From contig NC_092353.1 in the NCBI RefSeq assembly GCF_963676685.1, positions 76,508,001-76,572,000 on the forward strand: a DNA stretch of 64,000 nucleotides, read 5' to 3'. Position 1 is the first letter of the stretch. Each line of letters starts with the position of its first letter. The notes below the pieces were generated by a model. That model worked only from the letters and a program-made list of their open reading frames with translations. It had not been told where the DNA came from and ran no database searches. Both the position numbers and the translations under genes were made by a program. Origin of the DNA: Mytilus edulis (lineage: Eukaryota). Positions 6,041-63,565 of this stretch are shown here, piece after piece.

Positions 6041-7749
6041 TTATGTAATCTTGAACTGACGGATTTGTCCTGTGGAACTTACAACATTCAGTTTGTTAGT
6101 ATGCAAATAAACTCCAAATGATTCAGTTATTCCTCCATTTGCATTGAGTAATTTTCTGCTATTTTTACCATCTGCCGAGATCAACACAACACAAATGTTT
6201 CCATTCGAAATCACGTATATGATGCCGTGTTGATCAACAGCTATTCCAGAAGGACAACTCAGAATTGATTCGTCCTTGAATTCCCAACGTTTCTCTCCCC
6301 TTTTACTGTAGCATTTGAGTGTAGAACCATAATCAGTATAGTAAATGTTCTCTCCCGAGGTTGTAATATAACTCCAATCAGTCGCTATGGTGTTATCTTC
6401 TATCATAGTTCTTACTTTATTGTTTGATACGTTTATCGCTTGGATCCCTTTTCCTTTCTTACAGTAGAATAGCTGCCCATGTCTGTAAGTTAGACCTCGA
6501 CATATGCCTGTTTTAATTGTATTGGTTACTTGTTTGTTCTCCGTGTCTACAAGAACTAGTTTTTTGCTATATATCGTTGTAACAGTTACTGTTTTGTCAT
6601 CAATGCATGTCACATCAAATGGAAGTAGAGGCGAGAGAGGTATTTCACAGTCTAAAGTTCCATCGTTATGTACGATCACTAATCTATCATTATAACAGTC
6701 CGCAAGTATCATCCTTCCATCAGGAAAGACAGATAATCCTGTTATACATGTACTGTATTTTCCTGCTAGAACACTGAATTCTCCTATCAATGAAGCAGTA
6801 ATATCATCAATCGATTTACTACGGGGTGGAACAGCCGTAAACATTTGAGCCTGTTTCTCAGGACCGACGCCAATGACGATTGGTGATTTACTTTTTTCAA
6901 TTTTTATTGATCCAAAGCCAGTAATGTTTGATAGTATGTCTATAATCTTATCGTCTATCTGGCATTTCAAACCCAATTGGCTAAATCCGTCGTCTTTTGA
7001 TAGTTTTTTTACGTATTTTAACTCCTCAGCGACGTCCTTTTCTAACATTTTACTACCAATGAAAACCTGCAGGTCAGATCCGTGTTGTTTGACGGACATG
7101 AGATTTGTCTTCAAAATCTCAATCTCGTACTTTTTTTCGGAAGTGTAGCTTATTAAGAAGGGTTTCAATTTTGAGTTTGAGTTGTGTTTCAGTTGAATTC
7201 AAGTTGTCTATCATGTGTTTCTCTAATTCATCTAAGCGGGAGTTTAATTTTTCTTTTGTGTCTTTTATATTATTCATGCTTTTTAGATGCTGTTGCTTTA
7301 TTTCATGAAGATTGTCTTCTCGGTCCTTTACTACGCTTTCAATGTTTTCCTGAATGTTTTTCAGTGACTTCTCCAAACTGTCAAATAAAGTGCAAGTTCT
7401 AGAAGACTTGATGGCTTCGTCAATAGGGAACATTCCGTTGCATTCTTTGTGGTTTTCGGATATGCAAATTAGACAGCAAAGTTGATCATGACGTGGGCAA
7501 AACATCTGAAACGTCCTGTCATGCTCTGTACAATTCCGTTCAACTTTACAGATCTCGGCCGAAAGTTTCTTGTAGTTGTCCATAGAAAGGATCCCATGCT
7601 GTCTGGAAGCTTTTTACATGCTGTGGTAATTTATACATGTCGTGCAAAAACCTTCATCACATTCAGGACACCAGTAATCAGCAACGTGTGAAACATAGCT
7701 GAGCAACACAGATACCACACAGTATAACATCTACATCTGAGGCAGCCTT
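6041..7749 (-). pseudogene. TRIM-like B-box/coiled-coil/NHL pseudogene (G1, type A)
   Basis: ORFs 7119-7583 and 6041-7168 are collinear with the intact paralogs; start ATG mutated to AAG (7747-7749), +1 at ~7697, 4-nt insertion at ~7142-7145; no upstream promoter/mini-exon module found. Confidence 0.9.
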
Positions 7750-8155
7750 CTGAAAAAAGTAATGAATATGTTAAACAGATATTAAAAAATGTAATCAGCA
7801 TAATGGTGGTCATGTGTCTATGCATTTATCATTGCATTTAAATTATACGAAAACTTCGAAACGGCGCCATTAAATGTAATACAAAAGGTGTTCTCAGAAA
7901 TTCTTAAACCCCAAAAAACAGGTTGTTTTCCCAAATTAAATGCAGATAGTGTTTGAACGATATAAGATTCAGTACATTGTACAACTTCTAAAATAATTCT
8001 ATTTAAATCTTACAAAAAATATCCTTCTCTTATCTCTTTTATTTGTCTTACGATAGTTAGTATTTATACAAAACACTATCACGCGTATTCAAATGTAACA
8101 TTACGTCGTGAAAAGTGTTAACCAATCATTTTAATATCTCTCCACAATTTAAGTT

Positions 8156-8420
8156 AAACAAGAATGTTTCAATAGTACATGGATGCCTTACTCGCACTAT
8201 TATTGTCTATGTTCAGTGGACTGTAAAATTGGGATCGAAACGCATTCAAATTAGAAAGATCATATCATAGGGAACATGTGTACTACGTTTCAAGTTCAAT
8301 GGACTTAAACTTCATCAAAAACTACCTTGACGAAAACTGTAACTTGAAGCGGGACTGACAGACTAATGAACGAATGAACGGACGAACGGACGCACAGACC
8401 GATTTACATAATGCCCATAA
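8156..8420 (+). repeat. Bivalve Pearl/HINE-like non-autonomous repeat
   Basis: Starts AAACAAGAATG, has a (GGAC/GAAC)n tract near its 3' end and ends CATAATGCCC; second copy at the paralogous position 40172-40445. Confidence 0.6.
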
Positions 8421-9772: not shown

Positions 9773-9858
9773 TACAATACAATACAATACAATACAATAC
9801 AATACAATACAATACAATACAATACAATACAATACAATACAATACAATACAATACAAT
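9773..9858. repeat. (TACAA)n pentanucleotide microsatellite
   Basis: About 17 perfect units, abutting a MITE-like end (…CCACGAAAATAAATGAATCCACAGTA). Confidence 0.95.
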
Positions 9859-10395
9859 ATTTTTTTATTTTTCAAATTAAAGAGCATAAAATTAATTACA
9901 ACATGACATAAACATTACAGAGTGATTACAAAAACATAATACAATAATTTAAATGCATGAGGAAAGGATCAGTGGTCAAGAGGAGATAATTTTGATATCT
10001 TTTAGAGTATTGAAATTAACTAATTTTCTGATTTTCTAAGTTGCAGGCCTTTATCGAGGTATGCACATAAAATAGACAAAAAGTACAATGTTTTCCATTT
10101 CTACGATTGTGAAAATGAACTGGCGTATAGGGGAGATAATTTTGACGAAGTAGAATCCTGACTGAAGTATCAAACATTCAACATATTTTATTTTTTATCG
10201 TGATATTATTAGCCGGGTACCCAGTAAGTAAGACACACAGTGCGAATTTTATTCAAATGAACTCCTTTAGATTAAATTACAATAGAATAATGAATATTGT
10301 TCCTGTTGTATCTAGAACTTTAAGTAGGAACTCGCAAGCACATATAGAAATGTCGTCTCTTAGCCGTGTATGATGTTTTGTGTTACATCCCTATA

Positions 10396-11007: not shown

Positions 11008-12708
11008 TTAGGCAATGTCAAATTTGAGAAGATGTCCGGAGTAAGATACAACACACAGTTTGTTAATATGAAAATACATTCCGTATGATTTCGTAATTCC
11101 ATCTTTTTCGGTAAGTAATGTTCTGCTATTTTTTCCATCTGACGATATCAACATGACTTTTTCGTTGCTTTTCGAAATCACGTAAACGATACCGTGTTGA
11201 TCAACAGCTATTCCACCTACACCATTCATAATTGATTCGTTCTTGTATACCCTTTTTTCTCCCTTTACACTGTAGCATTTGACTGTAGAACCATCAGTGT
11301 AGTAAAGGTTCTCGTCTGAGGTCGTTATGTAACAAAATTCTTCCTGTATGGTGCAATCCTCCACTAGTGTACATCCTTTATAGTTTGACAGTTGGATCCC
11401 TACGATACCTTTCCCCTTTTCACAGAATAAAATCTGTCCTTGTCTGTATGTAATACCTCGACTAGCGCCTGTGTTGATTGTTTTTGTAACTTGTTTGGTC
11501 TTTGTGTCTATAATTTGTATTTTTGTGCCGTTACAAATTGTAACAGCTACCGTTTTGTCATCAATACATGTAACATCAAATGGACAAAAAAGCAAGAGAG
11601 GTATTTCAGAATCTAAACTGCCATCACTTTGTACGATTATTAATCTCCTATTATAATAACAGTCCGCAAATATGATCCTTCCATCAGGAAAGACTGATGA
11701 CCCTGTTATACACATATTGGATTGTCCTGCTGGAACTTTGATATCTCCAATCAACGAAGCAGTTATACAATCAATCGATCTACTACGGGGTGGAACAGCC
11801 GTGAAAATCTGAGCTTGCATTTCATGACCGACACCAATGACGATTGGCGATTGACTTTTTTCAATTGTTATTGATCCGAATGCAGTGAATTTGGACAATA
11901 TGTCTGTAATCTTATCGTCTATATGACATTTCAAACCTAATTGGCTAAATCCATCATCTTCCGATAGGTTTTGTATGCATTTTAACTCATCGGTGACGTC
12001 CTTTTCTAACATTTTACTGCCAATGAAAGCTTGCAGATCGGATCCATGTTGTTTGACGGACATGAGATTTGTCTTCAAAAGCTCAATTGTTGTCAATTTT
12101 GTGGATAAATTATCAAGGAGGGTTTCAATTTTAAGTTTCAGTTGTGTTTCAGTTGAAATCAAATCGTCTATTATGTTTTTCTCTAATTCATCTAAGCGGG
12201 AATTTACCTTTCGTCTTGTGTCTTTTATATCATTTAAGCTTTTTAAATGATGTTGCTTTATTTCATCAAGATTGGCTTTCCGGTCCTTTACTACCATTTC
12301 AATATTTTCCTGAATATCTTTAAGAGACTTCTCCAAACTGTCGAACAAGGTGGAAGATCTTGATGACTTTATGACGTCGTCAATTAAGAACATTCCAGTG
12401 CATTCTTTGTGGTTTTCAGACACGCACATTATACAGCAAAGTTGGTCATGACGTGGACAAAACATTTGGAGTTTCTTGTTGTGTTCTGTACAATTCTGTT
12501 CAATTTTACAAATCTCAGCCGGAAGTTTCTTATAGTCGTCGATAGAAATTATCCCATGTTGTCTGGAAGCTTTTGACAAGCTGTGATAATTTTTGCAAGT
12601 CGTGCACAGTCCTTCTTCGCATTCAGGACACCAGTAATTGGCAACGTTTGAAACATGCTGACCATCACAGATTCCACACAGCATAACATCTACATTAGAG
12701 GCAGCCAT
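11008..12708 (-). CDS. RING-less TRIM-like protein, 2 B-boxes + coiled coil + NHL-type beta-propeller, 566 aa (G2, type B)
   Basis: Uninterrupted ORF; B-box1 CGIC..CPEC..CTTC..H..H, B-box2 CTEH..CPRH..CCIMC..H; heptad-rich middle; repeats such as PFDVT..D, GIAVDQHGIVYV; TAG acceptor directly before ATG. Confidence 0.92.
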   Translation of the reverse strand: MAASNVDVMLCGICDGQHVSNVANYWCPECEEGLCTTCKNYHSLSKASRQHGIISIDDYKKLPAEICKIEQNCTEHNKKLQMFCPRHDQLCCIMCVSENHKECTGMFLIDDVIKSSRSSTLFDSLEKSLKDIQENIEMVVKDRKANLDEIKQHHLKSLNDIKDTRRKVNSRLDELEKNIIDDLISTETQLKLKIETLLDNLSTKLTTIELLKTNLMSVKQHGSDLQAFIGSKMLEKDVTDELKCIQNLSEDDGFSQLGLKCHIDDKITDILSKFTAFGSITIEKSQSPIVIGVGHEMQAQIFTAVPPRSRSIDCITASLIGDIKVPAGQSNMCITGSSVFPDGRIIFADCYYNRRLIIVQSDGSLDSEIPLLLFCPFDVTCIDDKTVAVTICNGTKIQIIDTKTKQVTKTINTGASRGITYRQGQILFCEKGKGIVGIQLSNYKGCTLVEDCTIQEEFCYITTSDENLYYTDGSTVKCYSVKGEKRVYKNESIMNGVGGIAVDQHGIVYVISKSNEKVMLISSDGKNSRTLLTEKDGITKSYGMYFHINKLCVVSYSGHLLKFDIA

Positions 12709-13309
12709 CTAGAATACAGACGATAAATTCTTAAAATAAATACATCTGAAAAATTAATGAATATGTTCAACAGATATTGAAACATGTACACAGCATAATA
12801 TATGGTGCAAATGTTTGTAATGTTAAATTATTGTGTGACAAATAAGTGAAAGATTCAAAACGGTGCCATTAAAAGTAGTTCAGAAGGTGTTCTCGGAAAT
12901 TCATCAACACACAAACACAGGTAGTTTTCCCAAATTAAATGCAGACAGTGCTGAAACTGATTGCAGATTACAACTTCTTAAACAATTCTGGTCAAATCTA
13001 ACAAAAATCAATCGCTCATCGCTTTTATTTTGCTATCGTAAGCAAAATAAAAGCGATGAGCGATTGATTTTTGAATGTGTCTTTTATGTTCTTTAAGATC
13101 ATCCAATTTTATTTTGTGTATTTTGTGTTAAAATTGATATTGAAGATTCAACCAATTGTTTGATTGGTTTAGTTAACACTTTTCACGATGCAATGTGACA
13201 ATTTTCAGACGCGTGATAGTGTTAAATATTCATACTTAACACTATCACGTGTCTGAAAATTGTCACATTTTAACACAAAATACACAAAATAATCTTTTAT
13301 GTTCTTTAT

Positions 13310-14120
13310 GAACCATGAACCATGAAAATGGGGTCGAGGTCAGATGAACCATGTCCGGCAAACATGTACAGTATACAATCCTTCCATACAACAAACATAG
13401 TTGACTTATTACTTACAGTTTAAGAAAAACAGACTTAAACATAACACTGAGCAATGAACCGAATTAAGGTCAAGGTAAAATAAAACTGCGAGACTGATAT
13501 GTACAATGTACATCATAAAATATTTTCATACACCAAGTATAGTTGACCTATTGCATAAAGTATTAGAAAAAAAAAAGACTTAAACTAAAAAACTTAACTT
13601 CGACAACTGAACCATGAAAATGAGGTCATGGTTAGATGACACCTGCCAGTTGGACATGCACACCTTAAAATCCTTCCATACACCAAATATACTAGACCTA
13701 TTGCTTATAGTATCTGAGAAATGGACTTGACCTACCAAACTAAACCTTGTTCACTGATCCATAAAATAAGATCGAGGCCAAGTAAACAATATCTGACTGG
13801 CACGAGGACCTTGTGGGGCACGCACATACCAAATATAGTTATCCTGTTACTCAAAACTAAGAGAGAAATTGACATTACAAAAAATCTTAACTTTTTTCAA
13901 GTTGTCACTGAACCATGAAAATGAAGTCAAGGACAATGAACATGTGACAGACAGAAGCTTCGTAACATTAGGCATCTATATACAAAGTATGAAGCATCCA
14001 GGTCTTCCACCTTCTAAAATATAAAGCTTTTAAGAAGTTAGCTAACGCCGCCCCCGCCGCCGCCGTATCACTATCCCTTTGTCGAGTTTTCTGCAACTAA
14101 AGTCGCAGGCACGACAAAAA
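13310..14120 (+). repeat. Pearl/Helentron(HINE)-like element with internal AACCATGAAAATGAGGTCAAGG subrepeats
   Basis: Several imperfect internal units, a (GCC)n tract and a terminal hairpin TGTCGAG...CTGCAAC/GTCGCAG...CGACA; paralogous copy at 56531-57550. Confidence 0.65.
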
Positions 14121-14507
14121 ATGCTGGAGAGAAAAAAAACTTTTGACCTACCTAGAAATCCAGGGTCGACAGAGGGAAAACAAACATATTTTTAAATTTG
14201 GCCTCAGTTGCAGATTGATTGACGTCTTACAAAAATTTTGACGTGATTTTAAACTTTGTATTAAAATCGATGTATTGTTTCAAACGGTAAAGGTCACCAA
14301 GATAACTGGGTTTACTCCATAGTAATATGATAATGTTGTCAATGTATACACAAAGTTAAGTCGAAGTACAGTGTAGTATAAACATAGAAAATTGCAAACA
14401 AATTTACGTGTCTATATTTGAAGAATCAAAGCAAAACTACAAATATGCATAGAATTTTAGAATATGAATGCTCGAAAAGGTTCAAAACGTACATAACTAT
14501 ATAAATT

Positions 14508-14720
14508 ACCTTTACAATTTGACCCAAATACAGGAAGTAAAAGTCCAAAGTCCACTTTTTGAACTATATAAATAGAAATTGTTTATGATCGGGTACAATC
14601 TCATGTCACGTGTGATCTTAATTCGTCTGCAATATTCTTATTTCTCTCTTTGATAATAAAGAAAAGGGAGGGAACGAGTGATTAAGTGTTCCTTGGAGTT
14701 CCCAAAATCATTATAACAAT
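14508..14720 (-). promoter_or_regulatory. Putative promoter, ~30-nt non-coding first exon and splice donor of G2
   Basis: Minus strand: E-box CACGTG, TATTTATATAG (14574-14564), TTACTTCCTG (ETS-like), then AAG|GTAATT donor (GT at 14509-14508); module conserved at 41180, 57933 and 26309. Confidence 0.6.
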
Positions 14721-15855: not shown

Positions 15856-17476
15856 TTAGGCAATGTCAAATTTTAGGAGGTGTCCGGAGTAAGATACAAC
15901 ATAAAGTTTGTTAATATGAAAATACATTCCGTATGATTTCGTAATTCCATCTATTTCGGTGAGTAATGTTCTGCTATTTTTACCATCTGACGTTATCAAC
16001 ATGACACTTATGTTTCTATTCGAAATCACGGAAACGATACCGTGTTGATCAACAGCTATTCCAGTTACACAATTCATAATTGATTCGTTCTTGTATACCC
16101 AAAGTTTGTCTCCCTTTACACTGTAGCATTTGGCTGTAGAACCATAATCAGTGAAGTAAAGGTTCTCATCTGAGGTCGTTATGTAACAAAAATCGTCCTG
16201 TATGGTGCAATCCTCCACTAGTGTACATACATTTAAGTTTGACAGTTGGATCCCTACGATACCTTTCCCTTTTTCACAGAATAAAATTTGTCCTTGTCTG
16301 TATGTAATACCTCGACTAGCGCCGGTGTTGATTGTTTTTGTAACTTGTTTGGTCTTTGTGTCTTTAATTTGTATTTTATTGTTGTTACGAATTGTAACAG
16401 CTACCGTTTTGTCATTAATACATGTAACATCAAATGGGTTAAGAAGTGAAAGAGGTACTTCACAGTCTAAAATTTCATCACTATGCACGATCACTAATAT
16501 TATCCTTCCATCGGGAAAGACTGATGATCTGAAGCAGTAGTATTATCAAGTAACCTAGGACGGGATGGCACTACCGTAAAAATCTGAGCCTGCTTTTCTT
16601 GATCTACGGTAAACAAAATTGACGACGGACTTTTTTTAATTGTTATTGACCCAAATGCTATAATTGTGGAGAACATTTTTGTGATCTTATCGTTTATCTG
16701 GCATTTCAAACCTAAATGGGTAAAATCCATCATCTTCCGAAATATTTTGTACGTATTTAAACTCCTTAGTGATGTCCTTTTCTAATATTTTACTACCAAT
16801 GAAAGCCTGCAGATGGGATCCGTGTTGTTTGACGGACATGAGATTTGTCTTCAAAATCTCAATCACGTTCTTTTTTTCGGAAAGTTTATTAACAAGAATT
16901 TCAATTTTGAGTTTAAGTTGTGTTTCAGTTGAATTTAAATTGTCTATCACTTCTTTCTCTAATTCATCAAAGCGGGAATTTAATTTTGTCTTGTGTGTTT
17001 TATATCATTTAATCCTTTAAGATGCTGTTCTTTTATGTTGACAATATTTTCTTCCCTGTCCTTTAATACTCTTTCAGTGTTGTCCTGAATGTCTTTCAGT
17101 GACTTCTCCAAACTGTCAAACAAAGTTGAAGATTTTGATAACTTGATAGCTTCGTCAATAGGGTACATTCCGGTGCATTCTTTACGGTTTTCAGATATGC
17201 AAACTAGACAACAAAGTTGGTATTGACGTAGGCAAAACATTTGAAATTTTCGATCATGCCCTCTACAATTTTGTTCTATTTTACAAATCTCAACTGGGAG
17301 GTTCTTATAGTTGTCCATGGATATTATCCCATGTTGTCTGAAAGCTTTTGATACGTTGTGGTAATTTTTGCAATTCGTGCATAGTCCTTCATCACATTCA
17401 GGACACCAGTTATTGAAACGTTCGAAACATGTTAAGCATCACATATTACACAAAGTATAACATCTGAGACAGCCAT
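15856..17476 (-). pseudogene. TRIM-like B-box/coiled-coil/NHL pseudogene (G3, type C)
   Basis: Four broken ORFs (16980-17318, 16687-16950, 16500-16733, 15856-16494) tile the family protein; early TAA near 17433, frameshifts near 16985 and 16725, deletions of ~52 and ~27 nt near 16529 and 16496; CAG|ATG at 17476. Confidence 0.9.
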
Positions 17477-17539
17477 CTGAAACAAAAGTTGAATATTAAA
17501 AACAGTTATTGAATAATGTACTCTGCAGACTGGTGGTAA

Positions 17540-26995: not shown

Positions 26996-27232
26996 TTATA
27001 TAATATTGAACTGATGGATGTGTCTATTGAAGCTTACAACATTCAGTGTATTAGTATGCAAATAAATTCCGTATGATTCAGAAATTCCATCTTTTACGGT
27101 TAGTAATGTTCTGCCATTTTTACCATCTGACGATATCAACCATGTCAACGCAACACATTTGTTTATATTTTCAATTACGTATACGATGCCGTGTTTATCA
27201 ACAGCTATTCCAGATACGTATACACCATTCAT
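26996..27232 (-). pseudogene. 3'-terminal remnant of a type-A TRIM-like gene (G4)
   Basis: GIAVDKHGIVYVI...SYGIYLHTNTLNVVSF..HQFNII*; downstream flank 26700-26995 resembles the G1 3' flank 5800-6040. Confidence 0.85.
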
Positions 27233-27384
27233 CAGTGATTCATCTAAATGGTGTCATCTTTCAATATATTAAATGATTTACATAGTGATTTATCATTAAT
27301 TTGTTCGTAAACCATATAAACAATTCTATCTTTTTTTGTTTCATAAAGACGACAATTTTTACTTTTTACGATGAACTTGGATAT

Positions 27385-41179: not shown

Positions 41180-41370
41180 ACCTTCACGATTGGACACACA
41201 AACAGGAAGTAAACAGTCCAAAGTCCAATTTTTGAACTATAGAAATTGTTTATTGTCGGGTACAATCTCATGTCACGTGTTATCTTAATTCGTCTGCAAT
41301 ATTCTTATAATTTCTCTCTTTGATAATGAGGAAAAGAGAGGGAACGAGTGATTAAGTGTTCCTTGTAATC
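41180..41370 (-). promoter_or_regulatory. Putative promoter/first exon/donor of G6
   Basis: Homologous to the 14508 module; donor GAAG|GTAATT; 6-nt deletion within the TATA-like element. Confidence 0.55.
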
Positions 41371-42663
41371 ATTACAACAATAAAAAAAAAAACAGTAACT
41401 AATAAAATCAGTGTTTTTATATATTTATTATAAAAGTCCAACTCTTATATGTATGAATTTCCATTTAAAGTCATACGATGTTTTACAAATTAACCAAACA
41501 TTTTACCTTTGAAACAATGTACGTGTACGTTAACCTTTTTCATCAGGAAAATGAATTGTTGCATAACAAAGCCTTCAGAAAAGTGCTGCTATTGAAAACA
41601 CCTAATCGAATTTTGGTAAAATACGGCGAAAAAACAGCAACAATGACAAGTTATTGTGTGGGTTAAGCATGTTAAGTGTCGCAAAATAAAGATCATCAGT
41701 ACCGAGGGCAAGCTGAAAAGGAGAAAAATTTAGAAAGCAAACATTTTGAAACTTTGATTAATTATGGTCCACGTTTTCAAAACACTTATAAAAGTCATTT
41801 AAATGGTTTGTTTAAAGTGTTTACGATGATTTCAACATGTCTATTTGAAATATTTTATCCATAATACGTTTTTTTTTAACCTGACCCCCCCCCCCCCCTT
41901 CCAATAGACTCAACTTATTGAAACGGTAATAAAATTTCAAACTTTTATCCGTCCAAATTTTTTTATTTTGGATGGCAAAATTCAACCATAATTTTCCCCA
42001 TTAGTGAAATTATTTTTTAAAGAGTAATGCAGATTAATGATTTTCCTTTCCATTTTGTTACGAGTAGCATTGCAATTAGAATACAATTTAATGTGTTTTA
42101 ATTTTGTAAAAGTTATAATAACATGTAGCATTGTGTACGAGGAACCCATTAAGAGAACGTTACATTGTTCTTCAAACGGACAAAACGGGAACATAGAATG
42201 AGAGATGTTCTGTTTCTATTGGTCCTCAATATCTAAATATATAAGACATAACAACTTACTATAAATTCACGTTTCTCCAACTTAAATAATTTAGACATAT
42301 TTTTTTCAGAAAAAAATGTGTATTGCAGAAATATTGTTCTTATCAATACTTTTCTGCACTTCTTTACTTTAATACATGCGTTGATGAAATGAACTTTATC
42401 TTTACCCGCTGATTTATATGGGACACAAATTATCTACTCTACCGACCTCTTTTGATACCTACATTATTGTAACTAACACGTTGTTTCTATTTTTATTCAT
42501 ATAAGAATGTGTATGTTATCGTTTGTCAATCATGACCTGTAACACAATATTTTTCTGATGATTTTTTTTTAATTTGCGATGGTCTGTCACGAAATATCAT
42601 AACATACTAAATAGTATTTGTACACAATAAACCTATCGCTCTCATTTTAGACCTTTATGGATA

Positions 42664-45472: not shown

Positions 45473-47178
45473 TTAGGCAATGTCAAATTTGAGGAGCTTT
45501 CCGGAGTATGATACAACACACAGGTTCGTAACATGAAAATACATTCCGTATGAATTCATAATTCCATCTTCTGCGGTGAGTAATATTCTGCTATTTCTTC
45601 CGTCTGGCGATATCAACACGACTCTTTCGTTGCTATTCGAAGTCACGGAAACGATACCGTGTTGATCAACTCCTATTCCTGTTACACAATTCATAATTGA
45701 TTTGTTCTTGTATATCCAAGGATTGTCTCCCTTTACACTGTAGCATTTGACTGTATAACAATTATTAGTATAGTAAAGGCTCTCACCTGAGGTTGCTATA
45801 TAACTATAATGGTTTTTTATGGTGCAATCCTCCACAAGTGTACATATTTTAAAGTTTGACAGTTGTATCCCTACGATCCCTTTCCCTTTTTCACAGTATA
45901 TAATCTGTCCTTGTCTGTATGTAATACCTCCACCAGCGCCTGTGTTGATTGTTTTAGTAACTTGTTTGCTCTTCGTGTCTATAATTTGTATTTTATTGTC
46001 GCTAAACAGTGTAACAGCTACCGTTTTGTCATCAATACATGTAACATCAAATGGATATAGAGGCGAGAGACTTATTTCAGTAGATAAACTGCAATCACTT
46101 TGTACGATAATTAATCTGTTATTGAAAAAACAGTCCGCAAATATCATCCTTCCATCAGGAAAGACTGATGATCCTGTTATACATGTACGGGATTGTCCTG
46201 ATGGAAGCTGGAATTCATTTATCAATGAAGCAGTAAAGTCATCAATAGATTTACTACGGGGTGGAACAGCTGTGAAAATCTGAGCCTGCTTTTCATGACC
46301 GACGCCAATGACGATTGGCGATTGACTTTTTTCAATTGTTATTGATCCAAATGCAGTAATATCGGAGAATTTGTCTGTAATATTATCGTCTATCTGGCAT
46401 TTCAAACCTATTTGGCTAAATCCATCATCTTCCGATAGATTTTGTATGCATTTTAACTCATCAGTGACGTCCTTTTCTAACATTTTACTACCAATGAAAG
46501 CCTGCAGATCGGATCCATGTTGTTTGACGGACATGAGATTTGTCTTCAAAAGCTCAAGTGTTGTCATTTTTGTGGATAAATTATCAAGGAGGGTTTAATT
46601 TTAAGTTTCAGTTGTGTTTCAATTGAATTAAAATCGTCTATTATGTTTTTCTCTAATTCATCTAAGCGGGAATTTACCTTTCGTCTTTTGTCTTTTATAT
46701 CATATAAGCTTTTTAAATGATGTTGCTTTATTTCATCAAGATTGGCTTTCCGGTCCTTTACTACCCTCTCAATGTTTTCCTGAATATCTTTCAGAAACTT
46801 CTCTAAACTGTCAAATAAAGTGGAAAATCTTGATGACTTTATAACGTCGTCAATTAAGAACATGCCAGTGCATTCTTGGTGTTTTTCGGATATACAAATT
46901 ATACAACAAAGTTTGTCATGACGTGGACAAAACATTTGGAAGTTTTTGTCGTGCTCTGTACAGTTCTGTTTAATTTTACAGATCTCAGCCGGAAGTTTCT
47001 TGTAGTCATCGATAGAAATAATTCCATGTTTCCTCGACGCTATTGACACGCCATGATAATTTTTACATGTCGAACACAGACCTTCGTCACATTCAGGACA
47101 CCAGTAATCAGCAACATGTGAAGCATCCTGAGCAACACAGATACCACACAATATAACATCTACATCTGAGGCAGCCAT
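45473..47178 (-). pseudogene. TRIM-like gene with a single 1-bp frameshift (G7)
   Basis: ORFs 46564-47178 and 45473-46567 join into a 568-aa protein if one C is restored between 46596 and 46597 (GGGTTTAATT vs GGGTTTCAATT in paralogs). Confidence 0.8.
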
Positions 47179-47340
47179 CTGAAAAAGTAATGAATATGTT
47201 AAACAGATATTAAAAAATGTAATCAACATAATGGTGATGTCTATGCTTTAGTCATTGCATTTGAATCATACGAAAATTTCGAAACGGTGCCATTAAATGT
47301 AATACAGAAGGTGTTCTCGGAAATTCATAAACCCAAAAAA

Positions 47341-47405
47341 TCAGCAACGTGTGAAGCATGCTGAGCATCACATATACCACACAGTATAACATCTGAGGCA
47401 GCCAT
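47341..47405 (-). pseudogene. 5'-terminal remnant of a type-D TRIM-like gene
   Basis: TAG|ATG then MAASDVILCGICDAQHASHVA; upstream 47406-51060 is homologous to the G5 upstream region 29089-31930. Confidence 0.85.
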
Positions 47406-51264: not shown

Positions 51265-52971
51265 TTAAGCAATGTCAAACTTGAGGAGCTTTCCGGAGTA
51301 AGATACAACACGCAAATTATTAATATGAAAATACATTCCGTATGAATTCGTAATTCCATCTTTTGCGGTGAGTAATGTTCTGCTATTTTTTCCATCTGAC
51401 GATATCAACACGACTCTTTCGTTGGTATTCGAAATCACGGAAACGATACCGTGTTGATTAACAGATATTCCAGTTACACCATTTATAATTGATTTGTTAT
51501 TGTATTCCCAATGTTTGTCTCCCTTTAAACTGTAGCATTTGACTGTAGAACGATTATCAGTATAGTAAAGGTTCTCACCTGAGGTTGCTATGTAACTATA
51601 ATCGTATTTTATGGTGCAATCCTCCACAAGTGTATATATTTTAAAGTTTGACAGTTGTATCCCTACGATCCCTTTCCCTTTTTCACAGTAAATAATGTGT
51701 CCTTGTCTGTATGTAATACCTCCACCAGCGCCTGTGTTGATTGTTTTGGTAACTTGTTTGTTCTTTGTGTCTATAATTTGTATTTTATTGTTGTTAAAAG
51801 TTGTAACAGCTACCGTTTTGTCATCAATACATGTAACATCAAATGGATGTAGGGACGAGAGACGTATTTCAGTAGATAAACTGCCATCACTTTGTACGAT
51901 TATTAATCTGTTATTTAAATGACAGTCCGCTAATATTATCCTTCCATCAGGAAAGACTGATGATCCTGTTATACACGAACTGTATTGTCCTTCTGGAACC
52001 TTGACATCTCCAATCAATGAAGCAGTAATATCACCAAACGATCTACTACAGGATGGTACAGCCGTGAAAGTCTGAGCTTGCATCTGATGACCGACACCAA
52101 TGACGATTGGCGATTGACTTTTTTCAATTGTTATTGATCCGAATGCAGGGATTTTGGATAATATGACTGTAATCTTATCGTCTATCTGGCATTTCAAACC
52201 TAATTGGCTAAATCCATCATCTTCTGATAGGTTTTGTATGCATTTTAACTCATCACTGACGTCCTTTTCTAACATTTTACTACCAATGAAAGCCTGCAGA
52301 TCGGAGCCATGTTGTTTGACGGACATGATATTTGTCTTCAAAAGCTCAATTGTTGTCATTTTTGTGGATAACTTATCAAGGAGTGCTTCAATTTTAAGTT
52401 TCAGTTGTGTTTCAGTTGAATTCAAATCGTCAATTATGGTTTTCTCTAATTCATCTAAGCGGGAATTTACGTTTCGTCTTTTGTCTTTTATATCATTTAA
52501 GATTTTTAAATGATGTTGCTTTATTTTATCAAGATTGGCTTCCCGATCCTTTACTACCTTCTCAATGTTATCCTGAATATCTTTTAGAGTCTTTTCCAAA
52601 CTGTCAAACAAGGTGGAGGATCTTGATGACTTAATGGCGTCGTCAATTAAGAACATTCCAGTGCATTCTTTGTGGTTTTCAGACACGTACATTATACAGC
52701 AAAGTTGGTCATGACGTGGACAAAACATTTGGAATTTCTTGTCGTGTTCTGTACAATTTTGTTCAATTTTACAAATTTCAACCGGAAGTTTCTTGTAGTC
52801 GTCAATAGAAATTATCCCATGTTGTCTGGAAGCTTTTGATATGCTGTGGTAATTTTTACATGTCGAACACAGGCCTTCGTCGCATTCAGGACACCAGTAA
52901 TCAGCAACGTGTGATGTATGCTGAACATCACAGATTCCACACAGTATAACATCTACATTTGAGGCAGCCAT
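51265..52971 (-). CDS. RING-less TRIM-like B-box/coiled-coil/NHL protein, 568 aa (G8, type B)
   Basis: Uninterrupted ORF; TAG acceptor directly before ATG; one B-box2 Cys replaced by Tyr. Confidence 0.9.
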   Translation of the reverse strand: MAASNVDVILCGICDVQHTSHVADYWCPECDEGLCSTCKNYHSISKASRQHGIISIDDYKKLPVEICKIEQNCTEHDKKFQMFCPRHDQLCCIMYVSENHKECTGMFLIDDAIKSSRSSTLFDSLEKTLKDIQDNIEKVVKDREANLDKIKQHHLKILNDIKDKRRNVNSRLDELEKTIIDDLNSTETQLKLKIEALLDKLSTKMTTIELLKTNIMSVKQHGSDLQAFIGSKMLEKDVSDELKCIQNLSEDDGFSQLGLKCQIDDKITVILSKIPAFGSITIEKSQSPIVIGVGHQMQAQTFTAVPSCSRSFGDITASLIGDVKVPEGQYSSCITGSSVFPDGRIILADCHLNNRLIIVQSDGSLSTEIRLSSLHPFDVTCIDDKTVAVTTFNNNKIQIIDTKNKQVTKTINTGAGGGITYRQGHIIYCEKGKGIVGIQLSNFKIYTLVEDCTIKYDYSYIATSGENLYYTDNRSTVKCYSLKGDKHWEYNNKSIINGVTGISVNQHGIVSVISNTNERVVLISSDGKNSRTLLTAKDGITNSYGMYFHINNLRVVSYSGKLLKFDIA

Positions 52972-57550: not shown

Positions 57551-57932
57551 TGGAGAAAAAAAACTTTTGACCTACACATCTGTGAAATCCAGGGTCGAGA
57601 GAGGGAAAACAAACATATTTTAAATTTGGCCTCAGTTGCAAACTGATTGACGTCTTACGAAAATTTCGACGTGATTTTAAAGTTTGAATTAAAATTGGTC
57701 TAATTGTTTGAAACGGTAAAGTTCAACAAGATAACTGGGTTTTACGCCATATTATTATGATAATGTTGTCAATGTATATATACAGTCGAATTACAGTGTA
57801 GTATAAACGTGAAAAATAGCAAACAAATTTACGTGTCTATATTGGATGAATCAACGCAAAACTACAAATATACATACAATTTCAGAATATAAGTGCTCGA
57901 AAAGGTTCATAACGTACATAAATATATAAATT

Positions 57933-58140
57933 ACCTTTACAATTTGATACACATACAGGAAGTAAAAAGTCCAAAGTCCACTTTTTGAACTATATAAATA
58001 GAAATTGTTTATTGTCGAAACAATCTCATGTCACGTGTGATCTTAATTCGTCTGCAATATTCTTATAATTTCTCTCTTTGATAATGAAGAAAAGGGAGGG
58101 AACGAGTGATTAAGTGTTCCTTGTAGTTCCCAAAATCATT
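57933..58140 (-). promoter_or_regulatory. Putative promoter/first exon/donor of G8
   Basis: Near-identical to the 14508 module: donor AAG|GTAATT, CAGGAAGT, CTATATAAATAG, TCACGTG. Confidence 0.6.
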
Positions 58141-59680
58141 ACAACAATTAAAAAACAGCTATAAATAAAACCGTTTTTTTTTATATATATTATAAAAGTA
58201 CAACCCTTATCCATGTTATATGTATTCCCATTTAAAGTCATACGATGCTTTACAAATTAACAAAAAAGTTTAACTGTAAAAAAATGTACGTGTACGTTAA
58301 CCTTTTTTTTTTTTAACGAAAATGAATTGTTGAAAATCGAAATCTTCAGAAAAGCAATGCTACTGACCATACCTAATCGCTTTTTAGTCCAGCCACAATG
58401 ACAACTTACTGTGTGGGTTGAGTCTCGCAAAACAAAGATCATCAGTACCGAGCATCAGTACCTAGCGTGAACGTGTGGAAGAAAAATTTAGAAAGCAAAC
58501 ATTTTTAAACTTTGAATAATTATGGTCCAGTGTATCAAAACACGAATAAAAGTCACAAAAATGTTTAGCTTAAAGTGTTGACACTGAATATGTAAAAGTT
58601 TCTTTTTGAAACATTCTATTCATGACACATTTTTAAAATATTGCACCGCAACCCCCCAACCCCAGCCGCCCAAATAGCTTCAACTAGATGAACAAGTTTT
58701 GAAATTACAAAACTTATATGGATTTGACTGAATAGCGATGGGTGTGTTGTCTTACAGTACTTTAAATCGCCGTCATAGGACTTAAAGAATAAAATGAGAC
58801 CGTATCAGAGATGTATTTTCTCGTTTTAAACGCTTTAAAAAGGTTTATCAGTCCAAATTTTTCTATTTGGATGCAAACTTCTTGACCGTTATTTTTCCCC
58901 AGTAGTGAAATTATTTTCTAATGAGTAATGCATTTTTTTTCGAGTGGGATGGCAATTAGAATACAATTATGATTTTTTAATTTGTAAGTGTTATAATTAC
59001 ATGTAGCAAAAAAGAGAACATTATATTGTTATTCAAAAGGACAAAAAGGGGAACCTAAAATGAAATATGTTGTGTTTCTATTGGCCCACAGTATCTAAAT
59101 AAAAACGACTTTGCTGCTTACTATAAATTAAAGTTTTTCAATCTTATATAATTGAGACGTATTTTTTTTCAGGAAAAGTGTGTATTTCAGAAATATTGTT
59201 CTTATCAATACTTCTCTGCGCCTCTTTAACCTAATACATTTAATGACAAAATGAACTTCATCTTAACCCTCTGATTTATATGGAACACAAACTATCAACT
59301 CTACCGACCTCTTTTGATGTTACTTTCACGTTTTTTTTTATATAAAAATGTATATGGTGCCGTTTGTGAATCATAACCTGTGAACGAATATTTTTTTCTT
59401 ATAAAAATTGTTTAAATTTGCGATGGTCGGAAGATGGCCTGTCAATGGATTCACGAAAAATGAAAACGTTCTAAATAGTGTATGTACAAAATACGTTTTG
59501 AAAAATCTCATTTTGAACTTTTATGAATACATGAAATTATTATTTTTAATCTTACCTTTGAATTATATCATTTTGAGTGTATCATATTATATCTGGCCTG
59601 GCGTAGAATTCGTGATTATGGATCTAACAATTGAACATTACAAAAACAGTAATGAAGGGTTATTATTATGCAAAGTATCA

Positions 59681-60150: not shown

Positions 60151-60324
60151 AATTTATTCTTGCCCTCATTTAAATCAATAAGATAGCAACAGAACTACGT
60201 AATATACAAAAGATATGTTGAGGGTGGGTCACAAACAGTCGGCAACACTACACAAGTGTGCGTGGCTAAGTTACTTAAAATGCCAAACAGTCTTGCAACC
60301 TTTTGATGACTATTATTCGTTTGT

Positions 60325-60687: not shown

Positions 60688-61864
60688 CATCAATATTTTA
60701 ACATTATTTAAAAAAAATATCTGCATAGTAAAAGCCTTCTGTAATTCATAAGCCTTGTCAGTAGTTTTTCTATGTTCTCTCACGTAATATTTATAGTTAT
60801 GTGGAGAATTCTATAATGACAAGAACCCGGTTTACAATTACTCTAACCAGCTTTGAACATATATGTAGTTTAAACACACGAGAACTTCTTTAATCCCAAC
60901 AAATAGAAAAGTATTGAATATTCCCTCTATTTACTGTTCACAACCTTAAACATTTCAAACGACCAGTAATGACCGCTTTGACGAATTGTCCGGGGTAATA
61001 TTTCGAGTAAAGCCGTATACTATCAACAAACATTTTTGACTGACATAAAAGAAAAATACCGTGAAAGGCGAGACATAAATATTTGAATCGGTGTTTTTGG
61101 ATTTTGGATATTCCAAAGTTAACTGATATTAATTAATATAAGTACTTACAAGATATGTCAACTCGGTGAAGATTTACTTATCGAGTACTCGTTGGATTTA
61201 CTGAGTGATACTCGAATACTCGCTCGAAAAAAGCAACCTACAAATTGATACACTAACTACATGAACTATACCTATTTAATGTATTGTGGGTTGTTGTATT
61301 ATAGACGTTTAAAAGTCTTCAACAATAGATCATAGTCCCAGGAATTATATACCATGATTTCATAGTTCATTTACTGCATGTACTAATAACGTCATCATAT
61401 TAACTGACAATTATGTAATTAATTAATTAATAACCACCTATAGAAAAATAATTACTCAAACAACAGTATTTGGGAATCATAAAAAAAATTAATGACCAAC
61501 AAAGGGGTGCTGATTAAAACTTACACATGCCTTTAATCAATTCTCCTGGGATATTTAGAAACATTCGATCTCCAAACTTTGATACGTAATCATCCGTCTT
61601 TCTGATGAAAATATAAGATCTGATGCTACCGGAGTGGCGGAATGACTAAGATACGACGATAAGGTAAAAGTCTAAGCATCGGACAGGTACTCTTGTTCAT
61701 AGTGTACTTCTGGTCAAAGGAAATTTTAAAAGGCAAACTTTTGAATTTTTAATTATTTTTTTTATTTTTGATTAATGTTCAATTTCCTTAGAGGCGCTCT
61801 TAATGCAAATATGTTTTCTTTAAGGAAGTAACAGCACCAGGACAGGAAACCGAATAGTTGAGGA

Positions 61865-63565
61865 TTAGGCAATGTCAAATTTGAGGAGGTTTCCAGAGTA
61901 AGATACAACACACAGTTTGTTAATAAGAAAACAAATTCCGTATGATTCACCAATTTTATCCTTTGCAGTGAGTAAAGTTTTGCAACTTTTACCATCTGCT
62001 GATATCAACACAACACATTTGTTTTTATTTGAAATAACGTATACGATGCCGTGCTGATCAACAGCTATTCCAGTAGGACAACTCAGAATTGATTCATCCT
62101 TGTATTCCCAAAGTTTGTCTCCCTTTACACTGTAGCATTTGACTGTAGAACCATTATCAGTATAGTAAAGGTACTCATATGAGGTCGCAATGTAACTAAA
62201 ATCGTTTTTTATGATGCAATCCTCCACTAGTGTACATAATTTATAGTTTGACAGTTGGATCCCTACGATTCCTTTCCCTTTTTCACAGTATAAAATCTGT
62301 CCTTGTCTGTATGTAATACCTCGACTAGCGCCTGTGTTGATTGTTTTGGTAATTTGTTTGGTTTTTGTGTCTATAATTTGTATTTGATAGTCGTTAAAAA
62401 TTGTAACAGCTACCGTTTTGTCATCAATACATGTAACATCAAATGGACAAAAAGGTAAGAGAGGTATTTCAGAATCTAAACTGCCATCACTATGTACGAT
62501 TATTAATCTCTTATTAAAATAAAAGTCCACAAGTATCATCCTTCCATCAGGAAAGACAGATAATCCTGTTATACACATATTGGATTGTCCTGCTGGAACT
62601 TTGATATCTCCAATCAATGAAGCAGTTATATCATCAATCGATTTACTACGGGGTGGAACAGCCGTAAAAATCTGAGCCTGTTTCTCATGACCGACACCAA
62701 TGACGATTGGCGATTTACTTTTTTCAATTTTTATTGATCCAAAAGCAGTAATTTTGGATAATACGTCTGTAATTTTATCGTCTATCTGGCTTTTCAAACC
62801 CAATTGGCTAAATCCATCGTCTTTCGATATGTTTTGTACGTATTTTAACTCCTCAGTAACGTCCTTTTCTAACATTTTACTACCAATAAAAGCCTGCAAA
62901 TCGGATCCATGTTGTTTGACGGACATTAGATTTGTCTTCAAAATCTCAATCTCGTTCTTTTTTTCGGATAGCTTATTACGAAGGGTGTCAATTTTGAGTT
63001 TAAGTTGTGTTTCAGTTGAATTCAAGTTGTCTATCATGTGTTTCTCTAATTCATCTAAGCGGGAGTTTATTCTTTGTCTTGTGTCCTTTATATCATTTAA
63101 GCTTTTTAGATGCTGTTGCTTTATTTCAATAAGATTAGCTTCCCGATCTTTTACTACTCTTTCAATGTTTTCCTTAATGTATTTTAGTGACTTTTCCAAA
63201 CTGTCAAACAAAGTGGAAGTTCTCGAAGACTTAATGACTTCGTCGATAGGGTACATTCCGGTGCATTCTTTGTGGTTTTCAGACACGCAAATTAGACAGC
63301 AAAGTTGATCATGACGTGGGCAAAACATTTGAAACTTTCTATCATGCTCTCTACAATTCTGTTCTATTTTACAAATCTCAGCCGGAAGTTTCTTGTAGTC
63401 GTCCATAGAAATGATCCCATGTTGTCTGGAAGCTTTTGACAAGCTGTGATAGTTTTTGCAAGTCGTGCACAGTCCTTCCTCACATTCAGGACACCAGTAA
63501 TTGGCAACTTTCGATACATGTTGAGCATCACAAATTCCACAAAGTATCACATTTGAGACAGCCAT
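61865..63565 (-). CDS. RING-less TRIM-like B-box/coiled-coil/NHL protein, 566 aa (G9, type C flank, mosaic body)
   Basis: Uninterrupted ORF; TAG acceptor directly before ATG; 5' flank 63566-64000 homologous to the G3 flank 17477-17920. Confidence 0.92.
   Translation of the reverse strand: MAVSNVILCGICDAQHVSKVANYWCPECEEGLCTTCKNYHSLSKASRQHGIISMDDYKKLPAEICKIEQNCREHDRKFQMFCPRHDQLCCLICVSENHKECTGMYPIDEVIKSSRTSTLFDSLEKSLKYIKENIERVVKDREANLIEIKQQHLKSLNDIKDTRQRINSRLDELEKHMIDNLNSTETQLKLKIDTLRNKLSEKKNEIEILKTNLMSVKQHGSDLQAFIGSKMLEKDVTEELKYVQNISKDDGFSQLGLKSQIDDKITDVLSKITAFGSIKIEKSKSPIVIGVGHEKQAQIFTAVPPRSKSIDDITASLIGDIKVPAGQSNMCITGLSVFPDGRMILVDFYFNKRLIIVHSDGSLDSEIPLLPFCPFDVTCIDDKTVAVTIFNDYQIQIIDTKTKQITKTINTGASRGITYRQGQILYCEKGKGIVGIQLSNYKLCTLVEDCIIKNDFSYIATSYEYLYYTDNGSTVKCYSVKGDKLWEYKDESILSCPTGIAVDQHGIVYVISNKNKCVVLISADGKSCKTLLTAKDKIGESYGICFLINKLCVVSYSGNLLKFDIA

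What the first reader, a model, noticed from the sequence alone, without database searches (positions are those of the whole stretch)
6041..63565. Tandem array of RING-less TRIM/NHL genes with hypervariable propeller loops: candidate diversifying cytosolic receptor repertoire
Seen: at least 10 co-oriented units in 58 kb. Framework segments are nearly invariant (PFDVTCIDDKTVAVT, KQHGSDLQAFIGSKMLEKD, SVFPDGR), but the short loops beside them differ in almost every copy, listed in order G1, G2, G3, G5, G6, G7, G8, G9. Residue before PFDV: L/C/N/H/Q/Y/H/C. Loop after V(A/T)VT: TIYSKK/ICNGTK/IRNNNK/TFTDNK/TLQIDK/LFSDNK/TFNNNK/IFNDYQ. After the D-x-(T/I)-I motif: ATDW/QEEF/QDDF/NNNL/KTDW/KNHY/KYDY/KNDF. 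After V(I/T)S: NGNIC/KSNEK/NRNIS/NRNRS/NKS/NSNER/NTNER/NKNKC. Established: in NHL propellers (Brat, LIN-41/TRIM71) the D-A and B-C loops form the ligand-binding top face, and antiviral TRIMs such as TRIM5 diversify their C-terminal ligand domain on a conserved B-box/coiled-coil scaffold. Inference: this is a birth-and-death family of variable pathogen or RNA sensors, a TRIM5-like design built with an NHL domain.
Basis: partly seen in the sequence, partly recalled or inferred. Interest (0 to 1): 0.82.

Follow-up and report, generated by a model that had tools for sequence, protein, structure and literature searches.

The report
Mussel RING-less B-box/NHL gene array
A mussel chromosome carries eight head-to-tail copies (five intact) of a TRIM-like gene without a RING finger, whose copies differ mostly on one face of their propeller domain; this fits a varied binding repertoire, but neither positive selection nor an immune role could be shown here.

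Summary
The window (a Mytilus genome, chromosome piece C10) carries 8 co-oriented units plus 2 fragments, not 10 or more genes. Five ORFs are intact (one of them has lost a zinc ligand) and three are pseudogenes.

- **Protein:** B-box1, B-box2, a long coiled coil and a six-bladed NHL propeller. Foldseek's best matches are Brat, Thin, Mei-P26 and TRIM2/71. There is no RING: the only upstream exon is non-coding.
- **Selection on the loops:** top loops evolve about three times faster than bottom loops (omega 0.8 against 0.3). 35% of top-loop columns carry four or more residues, against 6% elsewhere (p = 1e-7).
- **No omega above 1:** the M1a/M2a-like LRT is about 0, no site reaches posterior 0.9, and the top loops cannot be told apart from neutral.
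- **Mosaics:** the copies are gene-conversion mosaics (AU tests).
- **Expression:** G2 is transcribed and spliced. Tissue and inducibility are unknown.

It is one subfamily of a very large Mytilus family. The scan has already noted the same pattern on other DNA of this genome. The TRIM5-like receptor reading stays plausible but unproven.

The parts
6041..7750 (-). G1, pseudogene
   Evidence: Start codon ATG changed to AAG, +1 nt at 7697, in-frame stop at codon 45, +4 nt at 7142-7145.
11008..12708 (-). G2, intact 566-aa coding exon: B-box1, B-box2, coiled coil, NHL propeller
   Evidence: ORF. Pfam B-box hits. AF2 model with pLDDT 86. Covered by RNA-like contigs in 3 runs from 3 studies.
11014..11760 (-). 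Part of G2 that encodes the six-bladed propeller (residues 317-565)
   Evidence: DSSP strands of the model. Foldseek matches Brat, Thin, Mei-P26 and TRIM2 NHL domains with TM about 0.70-0.73.
11524..11535 (-). B-C loop of blade 2 in G2 (codons 392-395), the most variable loop
   Evidence: Loop omega about 2.1. 5 different residues at each of the 4 columns. A transcript contig in run X3 differs at 7 of these 12 nt, CNGT to NNNN.
12709..14509 (-). 5' intron of G2, 1801 nt, ending directly before the ATG
   Evidence: Joint 12708 to 14510 with CT..AC on the + strand (GT..AG on the gene strand) in run X1. The acceptor before the ATG is kept in all 8 units.
14510..14640 (-). Non-coding 5' exon of G2 (5' end approximate)
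   Evidence: Splice joint and low depth in X1. Donor AAG|GTAATT. The frame that would join the ATG is closed by stops.
15856..17480 (-). G3, pseudogene
   Evidence: A 1-nt deletion, a 1-nt insertion, 52-nt and 27-nt deletions, and zinc ligands H87Q and H100R lost.
27002..27241 (-).
   Evidence: tblastn residues 491-565, 62% identity.
27385..29088 (-). G5, intact, 567 aa
38121..39812 (-). G6, intact, 563 aa from the conserved ATG
   Evidence: Acceptor ttttcag|ATG.
41111..41424 (-). Homologue of the 5' exon region, upstream of G6
   Evidence: blastn 83% identity to 14440-14760.
45473..47178 (-). G7, broken by a single 1-nt deletion after 46597; H18D
   Evidence: The deleted base is not in a homopolymer run.
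47337..47405 (-). N-terminal fragment (first 25 residues)
   Evidence: tblastn.
51265..52971 (-). G8, intact 568-aa ORF in which the B-box2 zinc ligand C95 is Y
   Evidence: C95 is kept in 90% or more of 82 family members.
57865..58187 (-). Homologue of the 5' exon region, upstream of G8
   Evidence: blastn 91% identity to 14440-14760.
61865..63565 (-). G9, intact, 566 aa; a clear mosaic (G2-like, then G6-like, then G2-like)

Best explanation
This is a tandem array of one young subfamily of a very large, mollusc-wide and Mytilus-expanded family of RING-less TRIM-like proteins. Each protein has B-box1, B-box2, an antiparallel coiled coil and a six-bladed NHL propeller.

Shown:
- Each gene has one non-coding 5' exon and a single coding exon.
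- The array evolves by duplication, by gene conversion or unequal exchange (the copies are mosaics) and by frequent gene death.
- The zinc fingers, the coiled coil, the propeller strands and the bottom loops are under purifying selection.
- The D-A and B-C loops on the top face change at about the neutral rate.
- At least G2 is transcribed and spliced.

Inferred:
- The proteins form coiled-coil dimers that display two propellers.
- The variable top face is the ligand-binding surface, so the copies differ in what they bind.
- The top face carries no strong positive charge, which points to protein or other non-RNA ligands rather than RNA.
- Lacking a RING, the proteins would act by B-box/coiled-coil assembly, sequestration or recruitment of a separate E3.
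- A role in recognising fast-changing non-self (viruses, transposons, intracellular microbes) is the likeliest use of such a repertoire, but it is not demonstrated.
For: - **Architecture:** Pfam B-boxes; PDB sequence hits to the TRIM28 and TRIM25 B-box/coiled coil and to NHL-type Pizza/PknD blades; AF2 model with pLDDT 86; the best Foldseek matches are all TRIM-NHL domains.
- **Dimer:** ipSAE 0.69 against a best control of 0.00. That mark was reached by 21 of 30 solved homodimers and 0 of 23 solved monomers. The runs agree in at least 86% of contacts and the partner's pLDDT is at least 76. The contacts are antiparallel, for example 161 with 180 and 140 with 198. The score may come from the model's memory of TRIM structures.
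- **No RING:**
- **Polarity of variation:**
  - omega is 0.76-0.80 in top loops, 0.26-0.32 in bottom loops and 0.38-0.40 in strands.
  - Columns with 4 or more residues are 35% of top-loop columns against 6% elsewhere, p = 1.3e-7.
  - Entropy over 82 family members is 2.65 bits (top) against 1.63 bits (bottom), p = 6e-9.
  - A second subfamily on C4 shows the same polarity: 0.90, 0.30 and 0.28.
- **Purifying selection on the scaffold:** NG86 omega is 0.13 in the B-boxes and 0.28 in the coiled coil.
- **Mosaicism:** the nearest neighbour changes along the gene, and segment trees reject one another (AU p of 0.008 or less).
- **Gene death:**
- **Expression and splicing of G2:**
- **Family size and clustering:** 2522 first-look candidates, and all 77 that were scored are significant.
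- **Lineage-specific clades, no ortholog above 87% identity:**
Against: - No test gives omega significantly above 1 in this array. The M1a/M2a-like LRT is 0.05-0.6, and no site has P(beta>alpha) of 0.9 or more.
- The top-loop class lies below 1 in the full set and is only 1.2-1.3 (p about 0.1) in the shallow clade.
- The blade-1/2 patch exceeds the gene-wide synonymous rate, but fits omega = 1 once its own synonymous rate is left free.
- Nearly half the copies are dead or damaged, which also fits a redundant, decaying family.
- No ligand, no tissue and no induction data are available. One raw RNA-seq run had no read on G2.
- Top and bottom were assigned from the strand order of a predicted model, not from coordinates.
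Confidence: 0.6

Rival explanations
1. Relaxed constraint only. The family is redundant, and the top loops are simply the least constrained part of a stable propeller. They drift neutrally while gene conversion and purifying selection keep the framework alike. The copies have no diversified specificity.
For: Top-loop omega cannot be told apart from 1. There is no omega>1 class and no supported site. Three of 8 copies are pseudogenes and G8 has lost a zinc ligand. The listed G2 allele differences are 22 nonsynonymous to 8 synonymous along the whole gene.
Against: The same 12 loops are the most variable in every subfamily sampled, while the bottom loops, equally exposed, are as constrained as the strands. 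Top-loop composition avoids L, I and F relative to the neutral codon expectation and is enriched in G, N, S, Y and C. Loop lengths are almost fixed. The sister subfamily gives a marginal omega>1 signal at two top-loop sites (LRT 7.9, p = 0.019).
Confidence: 0.27
2. RNA-binding regulators of the Brat / LIN-41 / NHL-2 type. The propellers would recognise RNA motifs, and the array would diversify RNA targets, for example transposon or viral RNA, or germline mRNAs.
For: The nearest structures are RNA-binding NHL domains: Brat with hunchback RNA, Trim71 with lncRNA, Mei-P26, NHL-2. The variable face is the RNA-binding face of those proteins.
Against: The net charge of the 63 top-loop residues is only -2 to +3 across copies. 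TRIM71 and LIN-41 use a strongly positive top surface (PMC9634614). Identity to those domains is 15-19%. No filamin domain is present.
Confidence: 0.1
3. Substrate adaptors for endogenous proteins, with ordinary housekeeping or developmental TRIM-NHL-like roles. Duplication would serve dosage or tissue subfunction rather than recognition of non-self.
For: Canonical TRIM-NHL proteins (TRIM2, TRIM3, TRIM32) bind endogenous partners. G2 is expressed at modest depth in unrelated runs.
Against: There are no conserved one-to-one orthologs even within the M. edulis species complex (87% or less). Turnover and mosaicism are rapid. There is no RING for E3 activity.
Confidence: 0.03

Closest known systems
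TRIM-NHL proteins (class VII TRIMs: TRIM2, TRIM3, TRIM32/Thin, TRIM71/LIN-41, Brat, Mei-P26, NHL-2)
   Same: B-box, coiled coil and a C-terminal six-bladed NHL propeller, which are the best structural matches. The N-terminal strand closes blade 6. The top face is the ligand face.
   Different: There is no RING and no filamin domain. Only one blade is recognisable by Pfam and identity is 15-19%. The gene has a single coding exon. The family has hundreds to thousands of copies in tandem arrays instead of a few conserved orthologs. The top face is not strongly basic.
TRIM5alpha, fish finTRIM/btr and other expanded antiviral TRIMs
   Same: A conserved B-box/coiled-coil dimer scaffold with a variable C-terminal recognition domain, tandem multigene arrays, pseudogenes and lineage-specific expansion. 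This comparison rests on my own knowledge of those families.
   Different: The variable domain is NHL rather than PRY-SPRY, and there is no RING. Positive selection, which defines the TRIM5/finTRIM case, was not demonstrated here. No antiviral data exist.
RING-less TRIM-like proteins (for example TRIM14, TRIM16, TRIM29, TRIM44; from my own knowledge)
   Same: B-box/coiled-coil proteins without a RING that still act in signalling or assembly.
   Different: Those proteins carry SPRY or no C-terminal domain, and they are single-copy, conserved genes.
B-box gene expansion in bivalves (Regan et al. 2021, PMC8382680)
   Same: An orthogroup annotated 'B-box-type zinc finger / interferon-beta production' is listed among the families expanded in bivalves.
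   Different: That paper works at orthogroup level only. I found no description of the RING-less B-box/NHL architecture, of the arrays, of mosaicism or of top-face variability in the searched library.

Membership tests
TRIM (tripartite motif) family, strict sense | N-terminal RING finger | tested here: not met
   The protein starts at B-box1. The only upstream exon is non-coding, with stops in the joining frame. All 82 aligned family members start the same way.
TRIM (tripartite motif) family, strict sense | B-box zinc finger(s) | tested here: met
   PF00643 scores 24.4 bits against a cut-off of 24.1 in G2. PF22586 (B-box1 type) scores below its cut-off. The eight Cys/His of each box are kept in G2, G5, G6 and G9. 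TRIM28 B-box/coiled-coil hit at E = 1.6e-7.
TRIM (tripartite motif) family, strict sense | Antiparallel coiled-coil dimer | tested here: met
   The model has a helix at 120-221 and a return helix at 224-253. The homodimer prediction scores 0.69 against a best control of 0.00, with antiparallel contacts. This is a prediction only and may reflect the model's memory of TRIM structures.
TRIM-NHL subfamily (class VII) | C-terminal six-bladed NHL beta-propeller | tested here: met
   24 strands form 6 blades. Foldseek E values are 1e-14 to 1e-12 and TM 0.70-0.73 to Brat, Thin, Mei-P26, TRIM2, TRIM71 and NHL-2. By sequence only blade 5 reaches the Pfam NHL cut-off.
TRIM-NHL subfamily (class VII) | Conserved orthology to TRIM2/3/32/71 | tested here: not met
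   Identity to the solved NHL domains is 15-19%. All close relatives are Mytilus paralogs named 'uncharacterized' or 'B box-type domain-containing'.
TRIM5-like diversifying restriction factors | Positive selection (omega>1) at surface loops of the recognition domain | tested here: inconclusive
   The variation sits on one face, but the LRT is about 0 and no site has posterior 0.9 or more. Top-loop omega is 0.8, or 1.2-1.3 with CI 0.96-1.7 in the shallow clade. Power is low with 8 copies.
TRIM5-like diversifying restriction factors | Binding of a pathogen component, or antiviral activity | not testable with these tools
   No functional data. Only the transcription of G2 is shown.
Brat/LIN-41-type RNA-binding NHL domains | Electropositive top surface that contacts RNA | tested here: inconclusive
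   The net charge of the top-loop residues is -2 to +3. This was counted from sequence, not from a surface potential.

The most novel reading that the evidence does not exclude
The array would be one cassette bank of a germline-encoded intracellular recognition system of a thousand or more RING-less B-box/coiled-coil/NHL genes in mussels. New specificities would arise by exchange of propeller segments and loop-sized patches between paralogs. The G2 allele whose B-C loop differs at 7 of 12 nt would be one example. Coiled-coil dimers, perhaps between paralogs of the same coiled-coil type, would pair propellers combinatorially. This would be an NHL-based counterpart of TRIM5/finTRIM or of plant NLR clusters.
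Probability: 0.22. Interest if true: 0.75.

Novelty: new variant of a known kind. Interest (0 to 1): 0.45.

Why it matters
Bivalves have no adaptive immunity, yet they live in constant contact with microbes and viruses, and they carry large, poorly understood gene expansions. Suppose this family's variable propeller face does set binding specificity. It would then be a large intracellular recognition repertoire built on an NHL domain rather than on SPRY or LRR, diversified by gene conversion, and it would offer many natural variants of one scaffold for binding studies. If the loops merely drift, the family is instead a clear case of massive but functionally shallow gene turnover. That would be a caution against reading 'variable loops on a conserved frame' as proof of an arms race.

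Tried and rejected
- **Ortholog DNA not available:** No DNA of the M. edulis, trossulus, coruscus, californianus or galloprovincialis orthologs could be fetched, so the codon tests rest on the 8 window copies plus a second in-genome subfamily.
- **Pairwise ratios not trusted:** top-loop dN over propeller dS looked above 1 in the closest pairs (G2-G8 1.86, G7-G8 1.48). I do not rely on these because mosaic ancestry makes propeller-wide dS a poor local yardstick.
- **Blade-1/2 patch:** the test was chosen post hoc, and the signal vanishes when the local synonymous rate is left free.
- **Amino-acid composition:** tried as a way to separate drift from constraint, but it was not decisive.
- **Literature:** eight full-text searches and a term search inside the mussel pan-genome paper found nothing specific on this family.
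- **Other ORFs:** seven other ORFs of 100 aa or more have no Pfam domain. The window has no tRNA and no Rfam hit.
- **Hidden RING considered and rejected:** a RING in an upstream coding exon is excluded.
- **G7 assembly error considered and rejected:** the frameshift is not in a homopolymer run.
- **Presence/absence variation:** it could not be judged. No DNA run holds more than 59% of the sampled words of the 5.9-kb stretch, which is expected in so polymorphic a genome.


Full report
**What is there.** The window is G000:C10:76508001-76572000 of a 1.37-Gb genome. Its closest database proteins all come from Mytilus species. The DNA is AT-rich, at 30-36% GC.

A tblastn map with the 566-aa ORF at 11008-12708 finds eight units, all on the minus strand, plus two fragments:

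| Unit | Coordinates | State |
|---|---|---|
| G1 | 6041-7750 | pseudogene |
| G2 | 11008-12708 | intact |
| G3 | 15856-17480 | pseudogene |
| fragment | 27002-27241 | residues 491-565 only |
| G5 | 27385-29088 | intact |
| G6 | 38121-39812 | intact |
| G7 | 45473-47178 | one frameshift |
| fragment | 47337-47405 | first 25 residues |
| G8 | 51265-52971 | intact ORF, zinc ligand lost |
| G9 | 61865-63565 | intact |

The genome search finds no further close copy outside the window. The next nearest paralogs, on C4, are only 42-44% identical.

Five ORFs are intact. The lesions in the others are as follows:
- G1 has lost its ATG and carries a stop and two frameshifting insertions.
- G3 has several indels and has lost two zinc ligands.
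- G7 has one 1-nt deletion, which is not in a homopolymer run.
- G8 keeps its ORF, but the near-invariant B-box2 ligand C95 is now Y.

**Gene and protein architecture.**
- **Sequence matches.** Pfam finds two B-boxes, and only one blade (about residues 494-520) reaches the NHL cut-off. PDB sequence matches are the TRIM28 and TRIM25 B-box/coiled coil and NHL-type Pizza/PknD blades.
- **Model.** An AlphaFold2 model built on an 82-sequence family alignment has mean pLDDT 86. It shows two zinc-finger modules, a helix of about 100 residues (120-221) with a return helix (224-253), a hairpin, and 24 strands forming six four-stranded blades. The N-terminal strand 317-324 closes blade 6.
- **Fold.** Foldseek's best PDB matches are all TRIM-NHL domains: Brat, Thin, Mei-P26, TRIM2, NHL-2, TRIM71 and TRIM3, with E values of 1e-14 to 1e-11 and target TM about 0.7.
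- **Dimer.** A prediction for residues 1-310 scores 0.69 against a best control of 0.00. That mark was reached by 21 of 30 solved homodimers and 0 of 23 solved monomers. The runs agree in at least 86% of contacts and the partner's pLDDT is at least 76. The contacts are antiparallel. The model may be remembering TRIM structures, so this shows likeness, not binding.
- **No RING.** All eight units have a splice acceptor immediately before the ATG. In run X1 a contig joins 12708 to 14510 with GT..AG on the gene strand. The upstream exon is closed by stops in the joining frame. The protein therefore really starts at B-box1.

**Where the variation lies.** I assigned each propeller residue to a strand or loop from the model's DSSP string.
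- By the usual propeller convention, D-A and B-C loops form the top face. [quoted passage not shown]
- Among the 8 copies, 35% of top-loop columns carry four or more residues, against 6% of the other propeller columns (Fisher p = 1.3e-7).
- Across 82 family members of 27-86% identity, mean entropy is 2.65 bits in top loops, 1.63 in bottom loops and 1.68 in strands (p = 6e-9). Eleven of the 12 top loops exceed every bottom loop; DA4-5, at 2.05 bits, falls just below AB3, at 2.07.

**Selection.**
- **Pairwise values.** Nei-Gojobori omega is 0.13 in the B-boxes, 0.28 in the coiled coil, 0.53 in the linker and 0.51 in the propeller, with dS about 0.4.
- **Method.** I wrote a GY94-type likelihood with trees for each gene segment. 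It gives M0 omega of 0.37-0.41, in line with the pairwise values.
- **Test for a positively selected class.** An M1a against M2a-like comparison gives LRT 0.05-0.6. About 31% of sites sit at omega = 1 and the rest at 0.15-0.2.
- **Single sites.** A FUBAR-like grid gives no site with P(beta>alpha) of 0.9 or more.
- **Structural classes.** omega is 0.76-0.80 in top loops (interval 0.62-0.94), 0.26-0.32 in bottom loops and 0.38-0.40 in strands.
- **Blade-1/2 patch.** Four loops around blades 6, 1 and 2 reach 1.1-2.2. Pooled as 23 codons, they exceed the gene-wide synonymous rate (omega 1.34-1.44, p = 0.008-0.05, chosen post hoc). With their own synonymous rate left free, the best fit is omega = 1.
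- **Shallow clades.** In the G2/G7/G8/G9 clade, where saturation is least, top loops give 1.2-1.3 (0.96-1.7, p about 0.1). In the G1/G5/G6 clade they give 0.94.
- **Replicate.** A second subfamily of eight genes on C4 shows the same polarity (top 0.90, bottom 0.30, strands 0.28). It also gives a marginal omega>1 signal at two top-loop sites (LRT 7.9, p = 0.019).

My reading is that the top face changes about three times faster than the rest, at roughly the neutral rate. This array alone cannot separate diversifying selection at a few sites from relaxed constraint.

**Mosaicism.** The nearest paralog changes along each gene. G9, for example, is G2-like over codons 1-50, G6-like over 51-300 and G2-like again over 301-425. 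Synonymous distances differ by segment accordingly. Each of four gene segments rejects the ML trees of the others (AU p of 0.008 or less). The one exception is the first propeller segment (codons 301-425), which does not reject the tree of the second propeller segment. Gene conversion or unequal exchange among the copies is therefore established. It must be allowed for in any site test.

**Expression.** Three contig sets of transcriptome size, from three studies, cover 10500-12710, which is the G2 coding exon plus about 500 nt of 3' UTR. Coverage stops at the ATG, and X1 carries the splice joint. G2 is therefore transcribed and spliced.

One raw RNA-seq run, of which about 6% was read, had no read on G2. 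Tissue and inducibility are unknown.

In run X3 the G2 contig differs from the window at 7 of the 12 nt that encode the blade-2 B-C loop (CNGT to NNNN), but at only 2 other positions in 306 nt. This looks like a patch exchange or a very divergent allele. It lies 31-42 nt from the contig end, so it needs confirmation.

**Wider family.**
- The genome search returned 2522 first-look candidates, and all 77 that were scored are strong matches. Nearly all are uninterrupted reading frames of about 560-590 aa, and most lie in clusters on C4, C5, C7, C8, C10 and C12.
- In a protein tree, the window copies group with M. edulis, galloprovincialis and trossulus proteins. The M. californianus and coruscus copies form their own clade, and no protein is more than 87% identical to a window copy.
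- The ESM Atlas lists many mollusc clusters with B-box plus NHL.
- Regan et al. 2021 list a B-box orthogroup among the bivalve expansions. I found no paper on this architecture or on its variable face.
- The scan has noted the same pattern on other DNA of this genome. One earlier follow-up reported selection on about 20 top-face residues in another cluster. My tests reproduce the polarity, but only a weak selection signal.

**Verdict.** The array is real and well described, and it is one more member of a family the scan keeps meeting. The architecture, the one-sided variability and the birth-and-death dynamics are supported. The 'diversifying receptor' reading remains a reasonable hypothesis that these data neither establish nor exclude.

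Noticed in passing
window 22790-23797 (+), probably starting near 19940: A piggyBac-type transposase remnant or gene lies between G3 and G5. PF13843 (DDE_Tnp_1_7) matches at E = 4.6e-26 and PF13842 (zinc finger) at E = 1e-5.
   Followed up: partly
window 13455-14242 (inside the 5' intron of G2): A repeat with very high depth in the RNA-like contig sets (up to about 830) and about 34x in the raw RNA-seq run. Nearly all of those reads continue into unlike sequence, so it is a dispersed, transcribed repeat and not part of the gene.
   Followed up: no
window 11524-11535: In run X3 the G2 transcript contig has 7 changes in the 12 nt of the blade-2 B-C loop (CNGT to NNNN) but only 2 elsewhere in 306 nt. 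It may be a loop-sized conversion patch or a very old allele. It lies near a contig end.
   Followed up: partly
window 52687-52689 (G8 codon 95): G8 has an intact ORF, but the B-box2 zinc ligand Cys95 is Tyr. This residue is kept in 90% or more of 82 family members, so G8 may be a decaying gene.
   Followed up: partly
window 28223-28699, 38947-39360, 52154-52513, 62700-63308 (+): Antisense ORFs of 119-202 aa recur opposite the coiled-coil coding region of G5, G6, G8 and G9. They are most likely a by-product of the codon make-up of the coiled coil and not genes.
   Followed up: no
codons 106-262 of all units: There are two coiled-coil sequence types: G2/G7/G8 against G1/G5/G6/G9. They are combined with different propellers, and G9 has the second type with a G2-like propeller. 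If dimerisation is type-specific, this would define pairing groups.
   Followed up: no
G000:C4:68.72-68.83 Mb and neighbours (loci L011-L030): A second subfamily of eight or more genes shows the same top/bottom polarity. It also gives a marginal omega>1 signal at two top-loop sites, in DA3-4 and BC6 (LRT 7.9, p = 0.019). L013 and L014 encode identical proteins.
   Followed up: partly
window 9769-9859: An (ACAAT)18 microsatellite.
   Followed up: no
window 11008-12708 (G2) compared with runs X1, X3, X7: Of the 30 listed differences between the window's G2 and the transcript contigs, 22 are nonsynonymous and 8 synonymous. Five nonsynonymous ones are shared by all three runs (T36K, N77D, I184N, C314G, E516G), so the reference G2 carries several unusual residues. 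A further 22 differences were not shown by the tool.
   Followed up: partly
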